IMG/VR virus record: IMGVR_UViG_3300020473_000011
Location: 1 to 64,000 of that record
DNA length: 64,000 bases
Reading direction: 5' to 3' (one strand)
Made by a program: the position numbers and the translations under genes. This document shows, piece by piece, positions 6,553 to 55,451 of the stretch; the stretch's first letter is position 1; every line of letters begins with the position of its first letter. A model generated the notes under the pieces. It was given only the letters and a program-made list of their open reading frames with translations, ran no database searches and was not told where the DNA came from.

Positions 6553-8454
6553 GTGGTTATAACTAACTGTGTAATAGGCTTTTTAGTGTCTGACGCTGTC
6601 AACAAATTAGTAGAGTCCCTGTCGCATGCAACCACACAGCATGAACGCAATCTAAGCGTACTGCTCAACATGGTAAGGCATGAACGTATTTTTACAGATA
6701 ACGCACTGGCAAACCTGCTTAACTACGCAGGCACCTCAACGCTAAAAGAACACCAGCAAAAGCTTCGGAAGTACATGAAGAGGTTCGACTACTCAGATAG
6801 TTCGGTTGCCTCGTATTCAAGCCGTCTTAAAAAGCTCGTTGCGTACTATCAAGACCATTGCCTATCTGATGAATTACCGACCCAACTAAGCATTGGGGAA
6901 AAGCTTGGGCATCTTGCACGTAAAGAACTTGGCCACTGCTCTCAGAAAGCGCAGCTAGAACACCTGCATAGCCTTAGTGGCATTCCACTGCCGTCGTTAA
7001 AGCGGTGGCTTACTAAAGGTACGAAACCAACCAAGGCACATCAAGACGCACTGTTTAAGCTGGCTGACCATTTCGATGTCTCACGTAACTACTTAACGAT
7101 AGACCCCGTTGCTATGGCCTCACCAGCTACTACCCGTATCGCAAAAGATTCAGTCAAGGCACTGCCCAAGGTTATTTGGGGTGGTCACTTACAGGGTCAG
7201 CTCGACAAGCTCTTGCTTTTCAAGACTAAGGCGCGAACACCCGCGTTATCACTGGCGTCCTTTAAACTGAATCGACGCGAGGCTCAAACACTCGTAGGTG
7301 GTGCTCGTTGGACAACGAATGCCGATGGTAGTAATGCTTCGGGTCAAAACTTTGAACGGATGCTTGACCGCTATTTTCGCTGGTTGTGCTCTAATTATGG
7401 TCTTGAGGCGGAGCAGCTTGACCTCAGTATGTTGCTGGTGGCCGAGTACCTAGAAGCTTATGTGGATGATTGCCTCGATGGTGAGTTCTACGCCACCTTG
7501 CAGACAACATTAAACTTACTTTCAGGCTTAATTGATCCGTTCCAAGGCTACCTTTGCCGCTACCACGCACCATTAACGGGTTATCCTCTCGGAGACGGGC
7601 AAGAGTCCGAGTACTTCGACCAACTAAGTATATGGCAAGAGCACGCCAGTTATATTAATAGCCAAGTTAAGACATGGTTACGTGATGTTCGCCACTTAAT
7701 GGCCGAGCAGCAACATGACAGTGACGACGCAGGTAAGCGGAATATTGGTTGGCTTCTTGATAGCTTAGATAGCACACTAGACCAAAGTGTTGCCGACGTT
7801 CGTCAACTGTCCGCTGATTTAAGCCAGCATAGCAAGCGCCTGACAGGTATTAATCGTCTTGCGCCAGCCCAAGTCAGCCTTTGGCTTCTTATGAGCTTAG
7901 AAGCGCCCCTGCGTGTCTCTAACTGGTGCGCCTTAAAGTTCTCCGACAAAGACCGTAGCAAAGAGCCAATTCTCTTCCGTGATAGTGGGCGTTGGCGTCT
8001 ACGTGTGCCCCGCAGTTACCTCAAGAACAGGCGTGGTCGTGAAGTTGAGGCAATCGATCAGGTTCTTAGTAACCCTCTGATCGGCGAGCTTATCGAACAG
8101 GTTCTCAATTACCGCAAAGAGCATAAAATAGAGACGGATGCAGTCTTTGTACAGACGCGATCAAGTAAGCATCGTAGCGCAGGCGAAGCCTACCAAAGAA
8201 CAGCATTGGCAAAATCAATACAAACTTGGACGGGACGAGCCGCATTCACGCGCTGGCCTGACCGCGACGTGGGGCGTGGCATCAACCCTCATGGTATGCG
8301 ACATTTTGTAGCGAGTTACGTTCTAGATAAGACAGGTGATTATAGACTCGCGGCTACGAGCCTAATGGATAGCGTGGCTGTGGTCATGAATGTCTATGGT
8401 AAAAATGACCACAGCCTAAATCAGAAGAAGCTCGCGGAGCTTCATCGGGTGTAG
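6553..8454 (+). CDS. Large tyrosine recombinase/integrase-like protein with an internal HTH
   Basis: PLRVSNW (R), HGMRH (HxxR), terminal Tyr in VMNVYGK; internal SGIPLPSLKRW HTH-like segment. Confidence 0.8.
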   Translation: MVITNCVIGFLVSDAVNKLVESLSHATTQHERNLSVLLNMVRHERIFTDNALANLLNYAGTSTLKEHQQKLRKYMKRFDYSDSSVASYSSRLKKLVAYYQDHCLSDELPTQLSIGEKLGHLARKELGHCSQKAQLEHLHSLSGIPLPSLKRWLTKGTKPTKAHQDALFKLADHFDVSRNYLTIDPVAMASPATTRIAKDSVKALPKVIWGGHLQGQLDKLLLFKTKARTPALSLASFKLNRREAQTLVGGARWTTNADGSNASGQNFERMLDRYFRWLCSNYGLEAEQLDLSMLLVAEYLEAYVDDCLDGEFYATLQTTLNLLSGLIDPFQGYLCRYHAPLTGYPLGDGQESEYFDQLSIWQEHASYINSQVKTWLRDVRHLMAEQQHDSDDAGKRNIGWLLDSLDSTLDQSVADVRQLSADLSQHSKRLTGINRLAPAQVSLWLLMSLEAPLRVSNWCALKFSDKDRSKEPILFRDSGRWRLRVPRSYLKNRRGREVEAIDQVLSNPLIGELIEQVLNYRKEHKIETDAVFVQTRSSKHRSAGEAYQRTALAKSIQTWTGRAAFTRWPDRDVGRGINPHGMRHFVASYVLDKTGDYRLAATSLMDSVAVVMNVYGKNDHSLNQKKLAELHRV

Positions 8455-33935: not shown

Positions 33936-34604
33936 TTAGTTGCAGTCGGCGCAGCCCCAGTTGTTAAACGGATTCTCGACTAGCTCCGCATTGTAATAAC
34001 GGCGGTCTTGTGTCACCTTTTTGGTAAGGCCGTCAATTAATGGGAAGTCAGTGTCTTCCGTCTCGATTTCAGCAAGGCATAAGCCTTCATTTTTGTCTAA
34101 GAAAATATCAATTTCCCACAGGTAGCCCGAGTACTCAAACAAGTGACGGACTTTACTAATCCGTGCTGTAAGCGTCTCGTATATGGCCTCAGCGGACGTG
34201 ATTGGTATTGATGTTTCGTATTCTCTTCGGCTCGCGCCTGCTATGCGTTCTTTAAAGCAGAAGATTGCCTCAGCTTCGTCGATAATACGAATGCGAAGTG
34301 CCCACGAGGATGAGTCTACTTTGAAAAGTGCTTGTTCCTGACAGACCAAATCAACGCCGTCACAGGCCATCATTTCTTTGACATCTTTGGGGTCAATTGG
34401 GAAGGCAGTACTTGATGTATTTATACGACTCTTAACGAGTACAAAGCCCTGACCGTTCTTGTCTAACCCAAGCAGGACATCCCAGTCAGACTGCTCATTG
34501 ATGTAGGCTTGGCTTAATGTGTGACGCTCTTTGCAGTGCTCGCGGTACTTTTCATTGAATATGTTTACATCCATTACAAATTTTTCTTCGGTCTCTATGG
34601 CCAT
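33936..34604 (-). CDS. CYTH domain protein
   Basis: IETEEKF (ExExK), LRIRI, EYE, WEIDIF..NEGL..AEIE. Confidence 0.9.
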   Translation of the reverse strand: MAIETEEKFVMDVNIFNEKYREHCKERHTLSQAYINEQSDWDVLLGLDKNGQGFVLVKSRINTSSTAFPIDPKDVKEMMACDGVDLVCQEQALFKVDSSSWALRIRIIDEAEAIFCFKERIAGASRREYETSIPITSAEAIYETLTARISKVRHLFEYSGYLWEIDIFLDKNEGLCLAEIETEDTDFPLIDGLTKKVTQDRRYYNAELVENPFNNWGCADCN

Positions 34605-36141: not shown

Positions 36142-36312
36142 ATGACAACAATCTCAAAGCGTTTGAACAGCCGACGTCAGCGCATGCTCGGAATAAGCCA
36201 ACGTCGCAACAGAAGGCAGCAACTAGCCGCTAAGCGTGGTAAGCGTCAGTCACTACAACGCTATCGTGCATTCGAGGCTCGCGCTCATCAAGAAGCTTTA
36301 AGCGCTCAGTAA
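36142..36312 (+). CDS. 56-aa arginine-rich small protein (not in ORF track)
   Basis: MTTISKRLNSRRQRMLGISQRRNRRQQLAAKRGKRQSLQRYRAFEARAHQEALSAQ; AAGG SD. Confidence 0.6.
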   Translation: MTTISKRLNSRRQRMLGISQRRNRRQQLAAKRGKRQSLQRYRAFEARAHQEALSAQ

Positions 36313-36692
36313 AGCCCCCTGAGTATTTCATCGGCGGACTGGTCACGCTTTAAAAGTATGGCATGCGCTCGGTCACGTAACTCAGTCCATTCGGTCAAGT
36401 CGGAATAAGCACAAGTTGTACGTAGCACTGTCACAAGCGCTAAATCTGAGAGCCTAGCCTCATCGACTGAGCTTAGGATAAGTGCAAGTACTTCTTTTGC
36501 GGCTGGACTTGCCTGCACAAGAGGTGTTGCACTGAAAGATGGCAGCACCAAGCCTGCAACGTCTCTCAAAGCCTCCATAAGCGGTCTAATATCTTTTGCT
36601 GACTTAATATCAGCGCCTCTCTTGTAATAGTCATCTAGCACAGCTGCAACAGTATCGTACGCTGCGGAAACCATCACGGCATTATCTTTCAT
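36306..36692 (-). CDS. Hypothetical protein
   Basis: 128-aa ORF with AGGA SD. Confidence 0.6.
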   Translation of the reverse strand: MKDNAVMVSAAYDTVAAVLDDYYKRGADIKSAKDIRPLMEALRDVAGLVLPSFSATPLVQASPAAKEVLALILSSVDEARLSDLALVTVLRTTCAYSDLTEWTELRDRAHAILLKRDQSADEILRGLY

Positions 36693-36705
36693 AAGACGTT
36701 CCTAT

Positions 36706-36730
36706 AAAAAAGGCTACCCATTGGTAGCCT
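36706..36730 (-). terminator. Intrinsic terminator after the Ser/Cys peptide genes
   Basis: AGGCTACC-loop-GGTAGCCT followed by a T-run on the minus strand. Confidence 0.75.
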
Positions 36731-36755
36731 AAAGTATTAACTTTTGGTCAGCAGT

Positions 36756-36935
36756 TTAGCACGAGCTGCTACAAGAGCTTGAGCTGCATGAACTACATGA
36801 GCTGCATGAACTGCACGAGCTACAGCTGCCACCGCCACCACCTGAGCCGCCGCGACGCTTACGTTTGTTTGACATGTTTAGAGCTGCTTTGTAGGTAAAG
36901 CGCTTGTGCCTTGTACATTTACTTAATTGACGCAT
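36756..36935 (-). CDS. 59-aa Gly/Ser/Cys-rich precursor-like peptide 2
   Basis: MRQLSKCTRHKRFTYKAALNMSNKRKRRGGSGGGGGSCSSCSSCSSCSSCSSSSCSSSC; GGGGAG SD. Confidence 0.8.
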   Translation of the reverse strand: MRQLSKCTRHKRFTYKAALNMSNKRKRRGGSGGGGGSCSSCSSCSSCSSCSSSSCSSSC

Positions 36936-36954
36936 AGTATGACTCCCCTTTTTC

Positions 36955-37098
36955 TTAACACGAACTACTGCAAGAGCTACAAGAACTACAGCTACTGCCA
37001 CCACCGCCACTTGAGCCACCACGGCGTCGGCGTGACATATTTAGCGTACCCTTGTAGGCACTTCGATGGTTTTTAAGGTGTGTCTTTAAAGTCTTCAT
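36955..37098 (-). CDS. 47-aa Gly/Ser/Cys-rich precursor-like peptide 1 (not in ORF track)
   Basis: MKTLKTHLKNHRSAYKGTLNMSRRRRGGSSGGGGSSCSSCSSCSSSC; GAGGG SD; paralog of peptide 2. Confidence 0.8.
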   Translation of the reverse strand: MKTLKTHLKNHRSAYKGTLNMSRRRRGGSSGGGGSSCSSCSSCSSSC

Positions 37099-37111
37099 AG
37101 AGTGAACCCTC

Positions 37112-37615
37112 TTAGTTTAGCACTTTGTGCAATTTAAGCTGCTCCCACATGTCGCTAGTATCGACTAGCAACTCGTCAGGCAGTAATGAATCCATAGCGA
37201 AAAGTAGTGGTAGCTCGTCGGAACCGCAGGGTATTTCTTCACGTTGCGCGCAAAGGTAAAAGGTGCGAAGCGTCATGACTTCCATCGGCTCAGTTTGGGT
37301 ACCTGTGGAAGTCTTGAACTGCGCTTCTATCTCAGGTACGTGATCAACAAAGCGGCCTACTACGTTAAACAACTCGCGATAGTCTTTCGAGAATAAGAGG
37401 TACGCATGCCATAGCTCATCAACCAACTTTGATGGCATGCCGCATGGCTTTTGCGATTCAAGGCTGACAATGAAGTAGTCGATCAGGGCTTGGCCGCACA
37501 TTTCGACGTCTTGTTCGGTCAGCTCAACACTGAACTTAGTTTCAGCCTCTTTCTTGAAGCGTGCCAGTACATAGGGTGGAACTGTATGACCTTCTAAATA
37601 GCTCAGGTTCATCAT
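37112..37615 (-). CDS. Glycine-rich-domain-protein (GRDP/DUF1399-like) core domain
   Basis: MPSKLVDELWHAYLL..KDY...GRFVDHVP motif. Confidence 0.7.
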   Translation of the reverse strand: MMNLSYLEGHTVPPYVLARFKKEAETKFSVELTEQDVEMCGQALIDYFIVSLESQKPCGMPSKLVDELWHAYLLFSKDYRELFNVVGRFVDHVPEIEAQFKTSTGTQTEPMEVMTLRTFYLCAQREEIPCGSDELPLLFAMDSLLPDELLVDTSDMWEQLKLHKVLN

Positions 37616-37763
37616 GTTATTTCTCAGTCTCGTTTATGTACTCATCCTACCAACGCACCATTGGCTTTGCAACTTGTTGCTAAAATCCCCGACCTAGCTG
37701 TATAATTACGTCAAAGGCGCGACTGCCCTATTCCACTGCAACACTAAGAGAACCGAGATAATT

Positions 37764-38288
37764 ATGAATTATCGAGTAAATACGGATTCTGCGCGCCCTC
37801 AGCCCTTTCCACCCCATGGTAGGATTTCTGTAGAGGTTCACGGTACCAATAATGACCTAATCCATGTCAAATGCTTCGGCGCTTTCAATAAAGAAACAAT
37901 GCTAGCCTTAGTCGACATACAACAGCGCTATCGTGATTTATTGTGCCCCAAACGCTACGTGATCGTAGAGTTCATAGACACATGTTTAGCGCTGCCTGAG
38001 TTTTTTGCTGAGGCCACACGTCATCATAAAGAATTGGTTTCCCGTGGCCAGTCCTCAAAGGCCGTTGCTTATGTTATGCGCAAAGGTATCGAGGGTAAGT
38101 CCATGATGAAAGGCTTTTACTTGGGGGTCTATAAAGACGCTGGGATCCCAGTAGTCGTTACTGAGACCGTAGACGAAGCCCGCCAGTGGCTTAAAGAAAA
38201 AGGGCTGGGATCAGCCCAAACTAATGAGAATTGGAGCACACTCGCGGAATCGAACCGCGCTCATGCTGCTTTGCAGGCAGCCACCTAA
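37764..38288 (+). CDS. STAS/SEC14-like hypothetical protein
   Basis: Small alpha/beta pattern ending TVDEARQWL; 3' end overlaps tRNA-Cys antisense. Confidence 0.55.
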   Translation: MNYRVNTDSARPQPFPPHGRISVEVHGTNNDLIHVKCFGAFNKETMLALVDIQQRYRDLLCPKRYVIVEFIDTCLALPEFFAEATRHHKELVSRGQSSKAVAYVMRKGIEGKSMMKGFYLGVYKDAGIPVVVTETVDEARQWLKEKGLGSAQTNENWSTLAESNRAHAALQAAT

Positions 38289-38306
38289 CCACTCAGACAA
38301 GTGTGC
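38232..38306 (-). tRNA. tRNA-Cys(GCA)
   Basis: GCACACT/AGTGTGC acceptor, GCTGC-CT GCA AA-GCAGC anticodon arm, U73, encoded CCA. Confidence 0.95.
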
Positions 38307-38325
38307 GTTGTACAATGAATTAAGT

Positions 38326-38401
38326 TGGCAGGGGCTATAGGACTTGAACCTACAACCTTCGGAGTTGGAAACCGCTGCTCTCCCAATTGAGCTAAGCCCC
38401 T
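38326..38401 (-). tRNA. tRNA-Trp(CCA)
   Basis: AGGGGCT/AGCCCCT acceptor, G73, CCA; anticodon arm GCGGT-TT CCA AC-TCCGA. Confidence 0.93.
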
Positions 38402-38412
38402 GCAATGAAAAG

Positions 38413-38496
38413 TGGTACGGGTAGCGAGGATCGAACTCGCAAGGACATACCGACAGAATTTAAACCTGCTGCGTTTACCAGTTTCGCCATACCCGT
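38413..38496 (-). tRNA. tRNA-Leu(TAA)
   Basis: ACGGGTA/TACCCGT acceptor, A73, long variable region, GCAGG-TT TAA AT-TCTGT. Confidence 0.92.
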
Positions 38497-38502
38497 ATTG
38501 TT

Positions 38503-38590
38503 TGGTGGATAGCCTTGGACTCGAACCAAGAAGCCCTTTAAGGGAGCGGGGTTACAGCCCGCGACGCTACCAATTACGCTCTAACTATCC
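38503..38590 (-). tRNA. tRNA-Tyr(GTA) copy 2
   Basis: GGATAGT/GCTATCC acceptor, GCGGG-CT GTA AC-CCCGC, long variable arm, CCA. Confidence 0.92.
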
Positions 38591-38599
38591 AATAATGTT

Positions 38600-38677
38600 T
38601 GGTGGACACTGGCCAGATTCGAACTGCCGACACTCGGAACTTCAACCCGATGCTCTAACCAACTGAGCTAAGTGTCC
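38600..38677 (-). tRNA. tRNA-Phe(GAA)
   Basis: GGACACT/AGTGTCC acceptor, TCGGG-TT GAA GT-TCCGA, CCA; one extra G in the T-stem. Confidence 0.9.
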
Positions 38678-38687
38678 ACACTAAAAG

Positions 38688-38776
38688 TGGTGGATGAGGT
38701 AAGACTCGAACTTACAAAACCCTAAAGGGCAACGGGGTTACAGCCCGCGACGCTACCAATTACGTGTTACTCATCC
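38688..38776 (-). tRNA. tRNA-Tyr(GTA) copy 1
   Basis: GGATGAG/CTCATCC acceptor, GCGGG-CT GTA AC-CCCGT, long variable arm, CCA. Confidence 0.92.
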
Positions 38777-38790
38777 AAAAAATCTTTGTA

Positions 38791-39009
38791 CTACTCTACG
38801 TTGAGGCGTTCACCGTTCGGTAGTACAAGGGATAGCTCCACATGCCCACCAAGTGCCTCGACGTAAGCTGCCAGTTTAGTCACAGACAACTGTTTAATTT
38901 CCTTGCCTTCAAGTTTGCTGACACTTGAATCGCTAACCCGCATTTGAGCGGCAATGACCTCTTGCTTTACTTTTAGCTCTTTTCTGAGGTCTTTTAGATT
39001 AGGTTGCAT
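38791..39009 (-). CDS. XRE-family HTH protein (HigA-antitoxin-like)
   Basis: LKDLRKEL..KQEVIA..M.VSDSSVSKLE...LAAYVEALGGHVEL. Confidence 0.85.
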   Translation of the reverse strand: MQPNLKDLRKELKVKQEVIAAQMRVSDSSVSKLEGKEIKQLSVTKLAAYVEALGGHVELSLVLPNGERLNVE

Positions 39010-53417: not shown

Positions 53418-55451
53418 TTAGAATGTAACTTTAACTACGCGGTTAAATGAACCGCTAACTTTAACTAGTAACGCGTTGCGCTGCGTTGATGAAAAACCAA
53501 GACCGCTTAGCTGGTCATCTGTAGGGTCGGCCTTCAACTTAGAACCGAGTGCTTCAAATACCTTGCGGTGTTTGTTCAGTTCAGGTGCTAAGTTTTCGTT
53601 GTAGAATCCACGGATCTTGTCAGGTGACTGGCAGCCCTCTAGCATGAAGAAGAAGTGCTTATTACCAGTCTCTTCACCGTCCCAGTGGTTCGGTGAGTTC
53701 ATTACCATTGATACTTTTGACCATTGATGTGTGTTAACACCCCACTCTTGGCGTGAAGCCTCTGACCCTTTGATTGAGCTGATGATCTTGACGCCCTCAC
53801 TGTGCGAGTAGTCGAACTCAAGCACTATGATACTGCGGCCGTTTTGTAGTGCGTCTTTGTGTTCAAACTTAATGGTATTCCCGAAGTACTCAAATTCTAA
53901 AACAAAGCCAAAATCAATACGTTCACGTTGACGGAAGTTCTTCACCCGTACGCGATGGCGACCCTCTTGCATACGTGAACGGTCGGCATAGGCAATGTTT
54001 TCAACGGGTGTGCGTGAGTCGACACCCGTCGCGTTCATATCAATATCAAGGAACCCACCTGTGCGATAGCTTTTCTTGGAAGTAAAGTCGATCACATTAC
54101 CGTCAGGCTCTTCCATGCTAAGGTCTAAGTCGTCGCCATTGAACCATGCTAGAGAACTACGCACGTCCGCGTTGACATTACCGCCTGCGGCCTTAACCAA
54201 CTGGGTAATAGAAGCGTCGGCCAACTCGCCATTATAGCTCCAAGAGAAGTTGTTAGGCCACTTCAACATATTAGGCGCATCAGGGTACACAGGCGCAACA
54301 AGGCTGACCAGATTCGGCACATGTCGGTTTTCCATCATGACTTCAAGACTAGTGGCCTTTGGTAGCACATCTGCTACGAAGTCCTCAATGCTAATCTCTT
54401 CGACCTTATCGAACTTTTGCTTATTGTTGGCCTTTGTAGGCGCGAGAAGGTCAAGCGCATTACCCTTCATTTTCTTTTGAGCATCACGGTCGGCGAAGAG
54501 CACGTTATTCACTGTGATGTCTTCTAACCGAGCTGGGCGGCGGTAAAGCGAGTCTTCGAAGCCAAGCTGTATGATGGTCTCATTCGCTTCATCGATCTGC
54601 TTTTGTGTGATAAGGGCAGTTGGGCGCTTATAGTTCTCAGGCGCAACCTTCGCTTCATAAGATTTTACGGCATCTTCTAGGTCGCTGCCTTCGGAAAGGT
54701 CTGATAAGAGCGTCCCCATAGAAGTGTTGCGAAAACGGCCACTGTTACCAAGTTCTACAGACTTTTCCCAGAAAAACAGTTGTTCTTTTAGTGGGTCATC
54801 TAGTTTTTCTATGCGAGCGAACTCAGTTTTAACCTTAACGAGCGTGTCAACGATATGCTTGAACTCTTCACCGCGATACAAGGATCCCTGTGCAATTAGG
54901 TCACTTACTAACTCACACGAATAAAGGTCTACCTCACGTACGGAGCGCTCTAGTACCATTTTGTTAGCACGGGTGTCTGAAAGGTATGAGCCAGCCTCGG
55001 CATTTACAAACTTGTTAGGTAGGTCAAAATAGAAGTGTTCCCACTTCTTCTGTTCACCATTGGCCATAGGCTCAAAGTTGTGAGAAGTGCCCACGCGGGT
55101 TTCCCAGTGACGATACACATTCTGGATAGAGTCGCTATGTTGGCGTACGAAAAGGGAAAGTGCGTCAGCTACGGCCTGACGGAAGTCACTAAGCTCAATA
55201 TCCCACACTGTAACTAGTTTGCCATCAATGATAGCAATAACATTACCAATATTTCGGATGAAGTTGCGGCAGCAAGCGCAATCGTGTTCAGTACGTTCGC
55301 GATAAAGAGGGTTGGTGCCTTTAGGGAAGCTTGAAAGATATTCGTTGTACAACTCGTCTTTATTTAACTCGACGGTGTATAGCTCAGTGCTGTTTTCGGT
55401 CATATACGCTAACTGCGCATTAACAGCGTCACGCATGGCATTAAAGCTCAT
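53418..55451 (-). CDS. Large phage-type conserved protein (HxCxxC motif; DLDL/LDIDMN/PVENI domain)
   Basis: EHDCACCRNFI, WPNNFSWSYNG, DDLDL, LDIDMN, PVENI. Confidence 0.8.
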   Translation of the reverse strand: MSFNAMRDAVNAQLAYMTENSTELYTVELNKDELYNEYLSSFPKGTNPLYRERTEHDCACCRNFIRNIGNVIAIIDGKLVTVWDIELSDFRQAVADALSLFVRQHSDSIQNVYRHWETRVGTSHNFEPMANGEQKKWEHFYFDLPNKFVNAEAGSYLSDTRANKMVLERSVREVDLYSCELVSDLIAQGSLYRGEEFKHIVDTLVKVKTEFARIEKLDDPLKEQLFFWEKSVELGNSGRFRNTSMGTLLSDLSEGSDLEDAVKSYEAKVAPENYKRPTALITQKQIDEANETIIQLGFEDSLYRRPARLEDITVNNVLFADRDAQKKMKGNALDLLAPTKANNKQKFDKVEEISIEDFVADVLPKATSLEVMMENRHVPNLVSLVAPVYPDAPNMLKWPNNFSWSYNGELADASITQLVKAAGGNVNADVRSSLAWFNGDDLDLSMEEPDGNVIDFTSKKSYRTGGFLDIDMNATGVDSRTPVENIAYADRSRMQEGRHRVRVKNFRQRERIDFGFVLEFEYFGNTIKFEHKDALQNGRSIIVLEFDYSHSEGVKIISSIKGSEASRQEWGVNTHQWSKVSMVMNSPNHWDGEETGNKHFFFMLEGCQSPDKIRGFYNENLAPELNKHRKVFEALGSKLKADPTDDQLSGLGFSSTQRNALLVKVSGSFNRVVKVTF

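What the first reader, a model, noticed from the sequence alone, without database searches (positions are those of the whole stretch)
36706..37672. GRDP/DUF1399-like protein with two free-standing Gly/Ser/Cys-rich precursor-like peptides
Seen: a self-contained minus-strand operon with promoter TTGCAA-17-TAGGAT near 37672-37644 and a terminator at 36706-36730. It encodes a 167-aa protein with PS..VDELWH...Y...G.FVDH.P, then two paralogous peptides with their own SDs: MKTLKTHLKNHRSAYKGTLNMSRRRRGGSSGGGGSSCSSCSSCSSSC and MRQLSKCTRHKRFTYKAALNMSNKRKRRGGSGGGGGSCSSCSSCSSCSSCSSSSCSSSC. Both share YKxxLNMS, a basic patch, a Gly linker, (SSC)n and a C-terminal Cys. The track misses the first and mis-starts the second. 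From recalled family knowledge, this domain usually carries a fused Gly/Ser/Cys tail, and leader plus Ser/Cys-rich core is typical of RiPP precursors. Inference: the tail has been split off and duplicated, suggesting an enzyme-substrate or binding pair (new RiPP-like or metallothionein-like system). No YcaO, radical SAM or DUF692 enzyme was recognised in the window.
Basis: partly seen in the sequence, partly recalled or inferred. Interest (0 to 1): 0.75.

Follow-up and report, generated by a model that had tools for sequence, protein, structure and literature searches.

The report
Phage domain with detached cysteine-tail peptides
A giant marine phage encodes a small helical protein and, right behind it, two short peptides carrying the glycine/serine/cysteine tail that is normally fused to this protein family in bacteria and plants, giving a two-piece version in which the family's unknown function could be tested.

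Summary
On the minus strand lie a 167-aa gene (37615-37112), two paralogous peptides of 47 and 59 aa with their own Shine-Dalgarno sites, and a clean terminator. The window is the first 64 kb of a marine jumbo myovirus record of 281 kb, about 67% complete. The protein belongs to Pfam PF27765 (UCP032817-like). It is homologous to GRDP-like/DUF1399 at superfamily level only and does not score on that model. Most family members are membrane-anchored bacterial proteins with a fused Gly/Ser/Cys tail ending CGGGCGGGD. Plant GRDP2 tails carry the same GGGCGG motif. In 10 of 13 contexts of soluble tail-less homologs, down to 28% identity, a free-standing peptide with a leader, a basic patch and a Cys tail follows the gene. 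The peptide 1 leader is under purifying selection. A metatranscriptome contig spans the domain gene and peptide 1. Co-folding supports binding through the leader (ipSAE 0.77, best control 0.01). No MNIO, YcaO or linked radical SAM enzyme was found. The chemistry is unknown, whether metal handling or cysteine modification. Whether the architecture arose by fission or fusion is unresolved. This is a new variant of an uncharacterised but widespread module, of moderate to high interest.

The parts
37112..37615 (-). 167-aa soluble, acidic protein (pI 4.6, net charge -14) of Pfam PF27765 (UCP032817-like), GRDP superfamily. It has no membrane anchor and no Cys tail. Conserved core: M60 P61 S62, D66, W69 H70, Y79, G87, H92 P94, P136, F139, D142.
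   Evidence: (AF2 pLDDT 92, eight helices)
37107..37111 (-). Shine-Dalgarno GAGGG for peptide 1, 8 nt before its ATG. It is conserved in the spacers of L001, L002 and L004.
36955..37098 (-). Peptide 1, 47 aa: basic leader (residues 1-22, with R12, Y15, K16, L19, N20, M21 conserved), RRRR patch, Gly/Ser linker, then C-terminal CSSCSSCSSSC.
   Evidence: synonymous-only variation at 11 of 15 leader codons; leader predicted to dock on the domain; RNA contig 36945-37481 covers it
36943..36948 (-). Shine-Dalgarno GGGGAG for peptide 2, 7 nt before its ATG.
36756..36935 (-). Peptide 2, 59 aa, a paralog of peptide 1. It has the same R-x-x-Y-K-x-x-L-N-M-S leader motif, a KRKRR patch, a Gly linker and a longer (CSS)n tail with 7 Cys.
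   Evidence: No RNA contig covers it, which proves nothing. L001 has a second peptide that keeps R-x-x-Y-K-x-x-L.
36701..36730 (-). Intrinsic terminator: AGGCUACC-AAUG-GGUAGCCU followed by UUUUUAU.
37644..37672 (-). It matches 8 of 12 positions, no better than chance. A jumbo phage may use other promoter types.

Best explanation
This is a two-gene (split) form of a widespread but uncharacterised module: a helical GRDP-superfamily domain (PF27765) that works together with a flexible Gly/Ser/Cys-rich tail. In most bacteria the two are one polypeptide, held at the cytoplasmic face of the membrane by an N-terminal anchor. In this phage clade the domain is soluble and the tail comes in trans as one or two small peptides. 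Each peptide has three parts. A basic amphipathic leader (R12/Y15/K16/L19/N20/M21 face plus an Arg/Lys patch) docks on an acidic and hydrophobic surface of the domain formed by residues 35-60 and 124-155, next to the invariant MPS loop and the LPLLFxxD helix. A Gly linker gives reach. A CxxC-repeat tail is the working part. The domain's invariant polar residues (S62, D66, H70, Y79, H92, D142, and the commonly conserved C122) then act on or together with the tail thiols, either by coordinating a metal with them or by modifying them. Shown here: the genes, their conservation and purifying selection, the fused/split relationship, probable transcription, and the absence of known RiPP enzymes. Predicted: the leader-mediated complex. 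Inferred: that the Cys tail is the domain's substrate or ligand, and the chemistry itself.
For: The family and its fused tails. The fused tail of P0039 has the same design as the phage peptide core. Split arrangement beside tail-less homologs: 10 of 13 contexts at 28-77% identity. The domain gene and its peptide are the only genes shared by all split loci. The fused gene has no conserved neighbour in 80 bacterial loci, so the module is self-contained. Purifying selection on the leader and a conserved SD. Charge complementarity, -14 against +9 and +10. Co-fold ipSAE 0.79/0.77/0.73 against a best control of 0.01, a mark reached by 58 of 80 solved complexes and 2 of 110 mismatched pairs. The contacts fall on the leader positions that are conserved between orthologs and paralogs. 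One RNA contig spans the domain gene and peptide 1, with patchy depth against a flat DNA run. Invariant polar residues. The same domain-plus-Gly/Cys-tail pairing occurs in plant GRDP2 (PMC4299439) and in TIGR04222 proteins (PMC12452194).
Against: There is no biochemical evidence for any member of the superfamily. In the co-fold only residues 43-44 of the tail touch the domain with low expected error. The co-fold used my own alignment, so its calibration holds only roughly. Three tail-less homologs (L008-L010) lack a convincing peptide. Peptide 2 has no RNA support and no ortholog with the same leader. The RNA libraries could in principle contain DNA.
Confidence: 0.6

Rival explanations
1. A metal buffer or chaperone only (metallothionein-like). 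The Cys tails bind Zn, Cu(I), Cd or Fe without covalent modification, and the domain is merely a docking or metal-sensing platform.
For: The tails are CxxC or CxxxC repeats in flexible Gly/Ser, and they vary widely in length and sequence, as if only Cys content matters. The domain and tail are predicted to be cytoplasmic, where thiols are reduced. There are no exporter, protease or tailoring genes nearby. Related Cys-bearing RiPPs, the bufferins, act in copper homeostasis (PMC12452194).
Against: It does not explain the invariant Ser, Asp, His and Tyr residues of the domain, nor why a dedicated leader-docking partner has been kept from bacteria to plants. Metal binding was not tested. This overlaps with one branch of the best explanation.
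Confidence: 0.25
2. A true RiPP system. The domain is a new leader-recognising maturase that chemically modifies the Ser/Cys core, with fused autocatalytic and split forms in the way borosins have both. The two peptides are alternative precursors.
For: The peptides have leader, linker and core anatomy, and there are two different cores per enzyme gene. Leader-dependent docking is predicted. The domain has invariant polar residues. Fused and split architectures have a precedent in borosins (titles and abstracts of 10.1101/2021.12.24.474128 and PMC8429565). The Gly-run plus Ser/Cys core resembles the microcin B17 precursor (my own knowledge, not tested here).
Against: The fold matches no known enzyme: PDB Foldseek gave nothing at E <= 0.001 and VIA-align gave Z <= 4.7. 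No protease or exporter is linked, and the fused forms stay membrane-tethered. No modification has been observed.
Confidence: 0.2
3. The peptides are substrates of a host or distal enzyme, for example an MNIO/DUF692 as proposed for TIGR04222 tails. The domain would act only as a chaperone or recognition partner.
For: TIGR04222 proteins with similar Ser/Gly/Cys tails are often next to MNIO genes (PMC12452194). The fold of the window protein resembles a TIGR04222 protein at TM 0.57. All 5 bacterial genomes checked that carry the fused form have MNIO genes.
Against: No MNIO was found in the 281 kb of phage held. In bacteria the MNIO genes lie 0.3-3 Mb from the fused gene and are never adjacent. 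MNIO genes are common in those taxa anyway. TIGR04222 tails are predicted to be periplasmic, whereas these are predicted cytoplasmic. About a third of the phage genome is missing.
Confidence: 0.08
4. The small ORFs are not genes; they are low-complexity DNA that happens to be open.
For: Gene callers miss them: peptide 1 is absent from the protein collection. Peptide 2 lacks RNA cover.
Against: Codons 12-26 of peptide 1 vary at 11 positions by synonymous change only, and the SD is conserved. Peptides of the same design recur beside homologs down to 28% identity with unrelated DNA. They are the only such runs in six frames of 281 kb. The co-fold score is 0.77 against 0.01.
Confidence: 0.03

Closest known systems
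Bacterial UCP032817-like proteins (Pfam PF27765), e.g. Ralstonia solanacearum RSOE_06980, annotated 'hypothetical protein'
   Same: The same domain with the same conserved motif (MPSxxVDxLWH...GxFxHHxP...LPLLFxID). The Gly/Ser/Cys tail has the same design, including a basic patch, a Gly run and (CSS)n in P0039.
   Different: The bacterial proteins are single polypeptides with an N-terminal membrane anchor and the tail fused in cis. The phage protein is soluble and the tail is encoded as one or two separate peptides with a dedicated docking leader.
Plant glycine-rich domain proteins GRDP1/GRDP2 (DUF1399, Pfam PF07173 GRDP-like)
   Same: A homologous helical domain: fold TM 0.51-0.57, an Atlas cluster whose members match both Pfam models, and bridging proteins that match both profiles. 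The C-terminal Gly-rich region has interspersed Cys, consensus [CG]GGGCGG[GC] (PMC4299439).
   Different: The window protein does not score on PF07173. The plant proteins are about 800 aa, with extra regions between domain and tail. Their molecular function is also unknown; only stress and development phenotypes are reported.
TIGR04222 membrane proteins, putative MNIO (DUF692) substrates, and bufferins
   Same: An N-terminal structured part plus an unstructured C-terminal Ser/Gly region interspersed with Cys. The authors propose that the N-terminal moiety helps biogenesis of the tail (PMC12452194). Fold resemblance is TM 0.57.
   Different: There is no TIGR04222 HMM match. TIGR04222 proteins have several transmembrane segments and tails predicted to be periplasmic, and they are often next to MNIO genes. 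Here there are no TM segments, the location is predicted cytoplasmic, and no MNIO occurs in the phage record.
Borosin RiPPs, fused (OphMA-type) and split (SonM/SonA-type)
   Same: An architectural analogy only: the same enzyme-core pair exists both as one polypeptide and as an enzyme plus a free-standing precursor peptide (abstracts).
   Different: Borosin enzymes are SAM-dependent N-methyltransferases, unrelated in fold. No methyltransferase is involved here and no modification is known.
Microcin B17-type linear azole peptide precursors and thiopeptide precursors
   Same: A leader followed by a Gly run and a Ser/Cys-rich core. There is a weak compositional hit to TIGR03892 (E 0.077, 13.4 bits against a cut-off of 25).
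   Different: No YcaO cyclodehydratase or partner dehydrogenase occurs in the 281 kb held. The TIGR03892 hit is far below its cut-off.

Membership tests
Pfam PF27765 UCP032817-like | Match to the family HMM | tested here: met
   The precomputed Pfam assignment PF27765 is given for the window's own protein (P0001) and for all close homologs. The model is absent from the local Pfam copy, so hmmscan could not repeat it. The Atlas nearest fold cluster is 100% PF27765, TM 0.77.
Pfam PF27765 UCP032817-like | Conserved motif MPSxxVDxLWH ... Y ... GxFxHHxP ... LPLLFxID | tested here: met
   Alignment A1 of 49 sequences: S62, D66, Y79, F139, D142 are invariant; M60, P61, W69, H70, G87, H92, P94, P136 are at least 90% conserved.
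Pfam PF27765 UCP032817-like | Typical architecture: N-terminal membrane anchor plus a fused C-terminal Gly/Ser/Cys tail | tested here: not met
   The window protein has neither. The tail is supplied by separate peptides. This is the variant feature, not a reason to exclude it from the domain family.
Pfam PF07173 GRDP-like (DUF1399) | Match to the family HMM at or above the gathering score of 22.7 bits | tested here: not met
   No hit at E <= 1 by hmmscan and none at E <= 10 in the genome search. In that search the control genomes were also silent.
Pfam PF07173 GRDP-like (DUF1399) | Homology at superfamily level (shared fold, overlapping profiles) | tested here: met
   AFDB clusters named GRDP-like or DUF1399 match at TM 0.51-0.56, E ~1e-2. 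One Atlas cluster has 93% PF27765 and 33% PF07173 members. All 4 proteins that pass PF07173 also match the A1 profile at 21-64 bits. Arabidopsis GRDP1 matches only weakly, probability 0.35 and TM 0.35.
NCBIfam TIGR04222 | HMM match; multi-pass membrane protein with a periplasmic Cys tail | tested here: not met
   No TIGR04222 hit for the window protein or for 8 family members. No TM segment is present. Anchored relatives are predicted to have a cytoplasmic domain and tail in 74 of 84 cases. Only a fold resemblance, TM 0.57.
RiPP biosynthetic system | Precursor peptide with a leader and a core | tested here: inconclusive
   The anatomy fits: a conserved leader, a linker and a variable Ser/Cys core. 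No cleavage site or mature product is known.
RiPP biosynthetic system | A recognised tailoring enzyme (YcaO, MNIO/DUF692, radical SAM maturase, lanthipeptide enzymes) encoded with the precursor | tested here: not met
   No PF05114 and no PF02624 in the 281 kb. The single radical SAM gene is 70 kb away and matches only the generic CxxxCxxC region, far below every family cut-off. Lanthipeptide enzymes were not searched. About 33% of the genome is missing.
RiPP biosynthetic system | Leader-dependent recognition by a partner protein | tested here: inconclusive
   Co-fold ipSAE 0.77 against a best control of 0.01, with contacts on leader residues 1-27. This is a prediction, not a measurement.
RiPP biosynthetic system | A demonstrated post-translational modification | not testable with these tools
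   Needs mass spectrometry of co-expressed or native peptide.
Metallothionein-like metal-binding peptide | High Cys content in CxC or CxxC arrays and demonstrated metal-thiolate binding | tested here: inconclusive
   The tails hold 4 Cys in 12 residues (peptide 1) and 7 Cys in about 23 residues (peptide 2), at CxxC spacing. No metallothionein family hit. Metal binding cannot be tested here.

The most novel reading that the evidence does not exclude
The PF27765/GRDP-superfamily domain is a previously unrecognised peptide-modifying or metal-inserting enzyme. Its substrate is its own Gly/Ser/Cys tail in bacteria and plants, or, in this phage clade, free-standing leader-bearing peptides. That would make the operon a phage-encoded representative of a new RiPP-like class and would give the first biochemical function for plant GRDPs and hundreds of bacterial 'hypothetical' proteins.
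Probability: 0.2. Interest if true: 0.85.

Novelty: new variant of a known kind. Interest (0 to 1): 0.62.

Why it matters
The pairing of this helical domain with a Gly/Cys tail recurs in at least 593 bacterial species genomes for one subfamily alone, in TIGR04222 proteins and in plant GRDP stress proteins. No member has a known molecular function, and no paper in the library searched mentions UCP032817 or PF27765. In fused proteins the two parts cannot be separated. The phage version separates them naturally into a soluble 167-aa protein and short peptides. Binding, metal loading or covalent modification can therefore be assayed in trans with simple co-expression and mass spectrometry. It also shows that gene callers and assemblers systematically miss these peptides, because contigs break in the Gly-run DNA. 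Similar split systems are therefore probably under-counted.

Tried and rejected
1. Direct Pfam, NCBIfam and PHROGs scans of the 167-aa protein, of both peptides against NCBIfam, and of the neighbours gave nothing above cut-off. PF27765 is not in the local Pfam copy.

2. PDB searches found no solved relative: sequence profile, Foldseek and VIA-align wide, best Z 4.7. Globin-like folds recur among the weak VIA matches but sit below the noise level for helical proteins, so I rejected them as evidence.

3. The peptide 1 search in the 5.8-billion-protein collection gave no hit. The Atlas language-model search of peptide 2 gave only scores of 0.54 or less.

4. Neighbourhood clustering of 80 bacterial loci found no conserved partner gene. 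Clustering of the split loci found no third conserved gene. The Metallophos gene is shared only by L005-L007.

5. The single-protein scan of IMG/VR found no close relatives. Only one partial hit appeared among cultured or GenBank phages.

6. The first genome-contig scan with A1 failed for lack of a conserved stretch. It was repeated with A2.

7. The idea that the peptide leader derives from the GFxYxL segment after the fused domain was considered. The phage domain keeps its own counterpart of that segment, so the resemblance was left as unproven.

8. HD-domain or Ser-His-Asp hydrolase readings of the invariant residues were considered. Without coordinates or any fold match they remain speculation.

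9. The literature search for phage-encoded RiPPs or Cys-rich peptides returned nothing relevant.
Full report
**1. What is in the sequence**

- A 167-aa ORF lies at 37615-37112.
- A 13-nt spacer with GAGGG follows, then a 47-aa ORF (peptide 1, 37098-36955).
- A spacer with GGGGAG follows, then a 59-aa ORF starting at the ATG at 36935 (peptide 2, to 36756).
- After that comes a hairpin plus T-run at 36730-36701.

The terminator is picked up by the scan and folds as expected: 8-bp stem, 5 G-C pairs, z = -2.2. The proposed promoter matches only 8 of 12 consensus positions. That is below the scan threshold, and the region holds no more promoter-like sites than shuffles do, so I treat it as unverified.

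The mechanical ORF list extends peptide 2 to an 88-aa GTG-start ORF. Its N-terminus is an out-of-frame reading of the peptide 1 repeat. The ATG with its own SD is the sensible start.

**2. Genomic setting**

The window is the first 64 kb of a single 281,557-bp IMG/VR virus record, rated about 67% complete. The window's own protein also sits on contigs of up to 419,624 bp, so the full genome is probably near 420 kb.

Almost nothing in the window has a Pfam hit. Several features mark a jumbo myovirus:
- a 677-aa protein matches phrog_1735 at 2e-265 and is about 50% identical to proteins of large enterobacterial phages;
- tail sheath and virion proteins lie at 172-243 kb.

Runs that hold the DNA are marine or seawater metagenomes.

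Directly upstream of the operon lie six tRNA genes, for Cys, Trp, Leu, Tyr, Phe and Tyr, and a 72-aa HTH protein. The two peptides are the only Gly/Ser/Cys runs of 10 or more residues in any of the six frames of the whole record.

**3. The protein family**

Local Pfam, NCBIfam and PHROGs scans give nothing. The precomputed annotation of the protein and all close homologs is PF27765, 'UCP032817-like'.

An exhaustive HMMER search finds 514 cluster representatives at E <= 0.001. Most are 200-260 aa, with an N-terminal hydrophobic segment, the domain, a variable linker and a Gly/Ser/Cys tail that typically ends CGGGCGGGD. Among 140 representatives that carry the WH motif:
- 58 have an anchor plus a Cys tail;
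- 23 have a tail only;
- 26 have an anchor only;
- 33 have neither.

In 74 of 84 anchored proteins the Lys/Arg residues cluster after the hydrophobic segment. The domain and tail are therefore predicted to face the cytoplasm.

One narrow pattern for one subfamily already hits at least 593 species genomes, mostly Beta- and Gammaproteobacteria. 118 Ralstonia solanacearum megaplasmids carry a fused copy annotated 'hypothetical protein'.

The alignment shows S62, D66, Y79, F139 and D142 invariant. M60, P61, W69, H70, G87, H92, P94 and P136 are at least 90% conserved.

**4. Relation to GRDP/DUF1399**

The window protein does not score on PF07173, so it is not a member of that family by its HMM. Homology at superfamily level is nonetheless well supported.
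- The AlphaFold2 model (pLDDT 92, pTM 0.88, eight helices) matches its own family in AFDB clusters at TM up to 0.76.
- It also matches entries named 'Glycine-rich domain-containing protein-like', 'DUF1399' and 'TIGR04222 domain-containing membrane protein' at TM 0.51-0.57, E ~1e-2.
- One Atlas cluster has 93% of members matching PF27765 and 33% also matching PF07173.
- All four Gammaproteobacterial proteins that pass the PF07173 threshold also match my A1 profile at 21-64 bits.

No solved structure shares the fold.

The plant GRDP2 paper states that its C-terminal Gly-rich domain contains interspersed cysteines, with consensus [CG]GGGCGG[GC] (PMC4299439). That is the motif of the bacterial tails. 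The pairing of this domain with a Gly/Cys tail is therefore ancient and unexplained.

**5. The free-standing peptides are conserved partners**

I examined 13 independent contexts of soluble, tail-less homologs.

| Locus | Identity to window protein | What follows the domain gene |
|---|---|---|
| L001 | 76% | Peptide 1 ortholog plus a second Ser/Cys-tailed peptide that keeps R-x-x-Y-K-x-x-L |
| L002/L003, L004 | 72-77% | Peptide 1 ortholog; contig ends inside the Gly run |
| L005 | 50% | 49-aa peptide overlapping the stop codon, ending KRRKKRPGASCSSGCSSNCSTCSSDCQ |
| L006 | 40% | 40-aa peptide ending KKKKKGGGCSDCNDCSD |
| L007 | 43% | 86-aa peptide ending CSSSSCSSSSCGGGGGD |
| L099 | 28% | 50-aa peptide ending LNMAKKKKKKKSDGSCDDCSDCNDCSSCGD |
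| L100 | not computed (tail-less homolog P0103) | 84-aa peptide ending CGSSSCSSGCGGGCGG |
| L097/L098 | not computed (tail-less homolog P0029) | A basic peptide starts just before both contigs end |
| L008 | 32% | Ambiguous |
| L009, L010 | 27-28% | No peptide |

With the window itself, that makes 10 of 13 contexts with a peptide.

Across the split loci, the domain gene and its peptide are the only shared genes. Around the fused gene no neighbour is conserved in more than 16 of 80 loci. The fused tail of P0039 (RRRSSSGGGGGGGDGCSSCSSCSSCSGCSGSSSSD) has the same basic-patch, Gly-run and (CSS)n design as the phage peptides.

**6. Evidence that the peptides are expressed and selected**

In peptide 1, codons 12-26 (R-S/G-A-Y-K-G-T-L-N-M-S/T-R-R-R-R) vary among four phage relatives at 11 positions by synonymous change only, and at 2 positions by conservative replacement. 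The GAGGG SD is kept in all four spacers.

Two marine metatranscriptome runs, from a sample other than the DNA source, give 100%-identical contigs that cover the region in patches. One contig (36945-37481) spans most of the domain gene and all of peptide 1 at word depth 28.7 and 120.5, the second highest in the 5-kb stretch. Adjacent stretches read zero, while the DNA run is flat at about 26. That pattern favours transcription over DNA carry-over, although the tool warns that it is not proof. Peptide 2 and the 5' end of the domain gene are not covered, which proves nothing either way.

**7. Predicted complex**

The domain is acidic (pI 4.6, charge -14) and the peptides are basic (+8.6 and +10.5). 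Co-folding of the domain (with alignment A1) and peptide 1 scored ipSAE 0.79, 0.77 and 0.73, against 0.01, 0.00 and 0.00 for three controls. That mark was reached by 58 of 80 solved complexes and 2 of 110 mismatched pairs, and the counts hold only roughly because my own alignment was used.

Confident contacts are on peptide residues 1-4, 8-9, 12, 15-16, 19-21 and 23-27. This is a helical periodicity, and it coincides with the positions conserved between orthologs and between the two paralogs (R12, Y15, K16, L19, N20, M21). On the domain the contacts are residues 4, 8, 35-60 and 124-155, which include acidic and hydrophobic residues. They interleave with invariant P136, F139 and D142 and include M60 of the MPS motif. 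Of the Cys tail, only residues 43-44 touch the domain with low expected error.

**8. What it probably does**

The fusion/fission pattern, the self-contained nature of the fused gene, the leader-mediated docking and the invariant polar residues together argue that the domain and the Cys tail are a functional pair. The tail is the domain's ligand or substrate.

I cannot decide the chemistry. The leading candidates are metal coordination by tail thiols together with the domain's His and Asp residues, and covalent modification of Cys or Ser.

A classical exported RiPP is less likely, for three reasons.
- No protease, exporter or known tailoring enzyme is linked. There is no MNIO or YcaO in 281 kb, and the only radical SAM gene is generic and 70 kb away.
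- The fused forms stay tethered to the membrane.
- The MNIO-substrate idea proposed for TIGR04222 tails (PMC12452194) finds no adjacency here.

**9. Direction of evolution**

A maximum-likelihood tree of 49 domain sequences places the 33 anchored, fused-tail sequences on one side of a branch (support 91/80). The soluble tail-less and split lineages form a grade on the other side. One transition between architectures is enough, but without an outgroup fission and fusion cannot be told apart. That relatives in the superfamily (GRDP, TIGR04222) have fused tails hints at fission. This was not tested.

**10. Verdict**

The finding is real and more than chance. It is a conserved, probably expressed, two-gene form of an uncharacterised but very widespread domain-plus-tail module, carried by a marine jumbo phage and its relatives. 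It is a new variant of a known but functionally unknown kind. Its main value is that it makes the function of the whole superfamily testable in trans. Interest is 0.62.

Noticed in passing
window 38232-38776 (-): An array of six tRNA genes (Cys-GCA, Trp, Leu-UAA, Tyr, Phe, Tyr) lies directly upstream of the operon, on the same strand. Metatranscriptome contigs cover 38397-38762. A tRNA-Cys next to Cys-rich peptide genes may be coincidence.
   Followed up: partly
window 37764-38288 (+): A 174-aa ORF divergent from the operon overlaps tRNA-Cys by 57 nt at its 3' end. It has no family hit, and an RNA contig covers its 5' part (37654-38046).
   Followed up: partly
window 53418-55451 (-): A 677-aa protein matches phrog_1735 at 2e-265 and is about 50% identical to proteins of 546 phage records (Salmonella, Klebsiella and others). 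A few of those records annotate it as DNA-directed RNA polymerase.
   Followed up: partly
window 6553-8454 (+): A 633-aa protein has a weak C-terminal Phage_integrase match (25.4 bits against a cut-off of 27.1) and a match to phrog_216 integrase. An integrase is unusual in a jumbo lytic-type myovirus.
   Followed up: no
window 33936-34604 (-) and 38791-39009 (-): A CYTH-domain protein and a 72-aa HTH (HTH_37/HTH_3) protein flank the region. Both are syntenic in the related contigs L001 and L002.
   Followed up: partly
L013 3806-5089: In an IMG/VR contig, a tail-less homolog of the domain is followed by three paralogous small secreted proteins (90-109 aa) with several Cys. This could be a different kind of trans partner.
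   Followed up: no
L002 6518-6628, L003, L004 1481-1585, L097/L098 ends: Five independent metagenome contigs end inside the Gly-run or Cys-repeat DNA of the peptide gene. Assemblies and gene calls therefore lose these peptides systematically, and the split system is probably under-counted.
   Followed up: partly
P0005 (variant of window 37112-37615): A 131-aa variant, 98% identical, diverges after residue 110 through a frameshift. It is recorded on 3 contigs of up to 416,434 bp. It could be a strain variant or an assembly error. One RNA contig separately shows a 1-nt deletion at 37228.
   Followed up: no
G000 108142-108513 (-) (L096 1114-1956): The only radical SAM protein in the record is 280 aa and matches just the generic CxxxCxxC region (best hit AlbA at 32.5 bits against a cut-off of 850). 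It lies 70 kb from the operon and nothing links it to it.
   Followed up: partly
L005 1645-2409, L006 3364-4185, L007 584-1447: A Metallophos (calcineurin-like phosphoesterase) gene lies within 2 kb of the domain-peptide pair in three distant split loci, but not in the window or L001.
   Followed up: partly
window 36306-36692 (-): A 128-aa ORF starts right after the terminator. It has no family hit, is absent from the syntenic contig L001, and has no RNA contig cover.
   Followed up: partly
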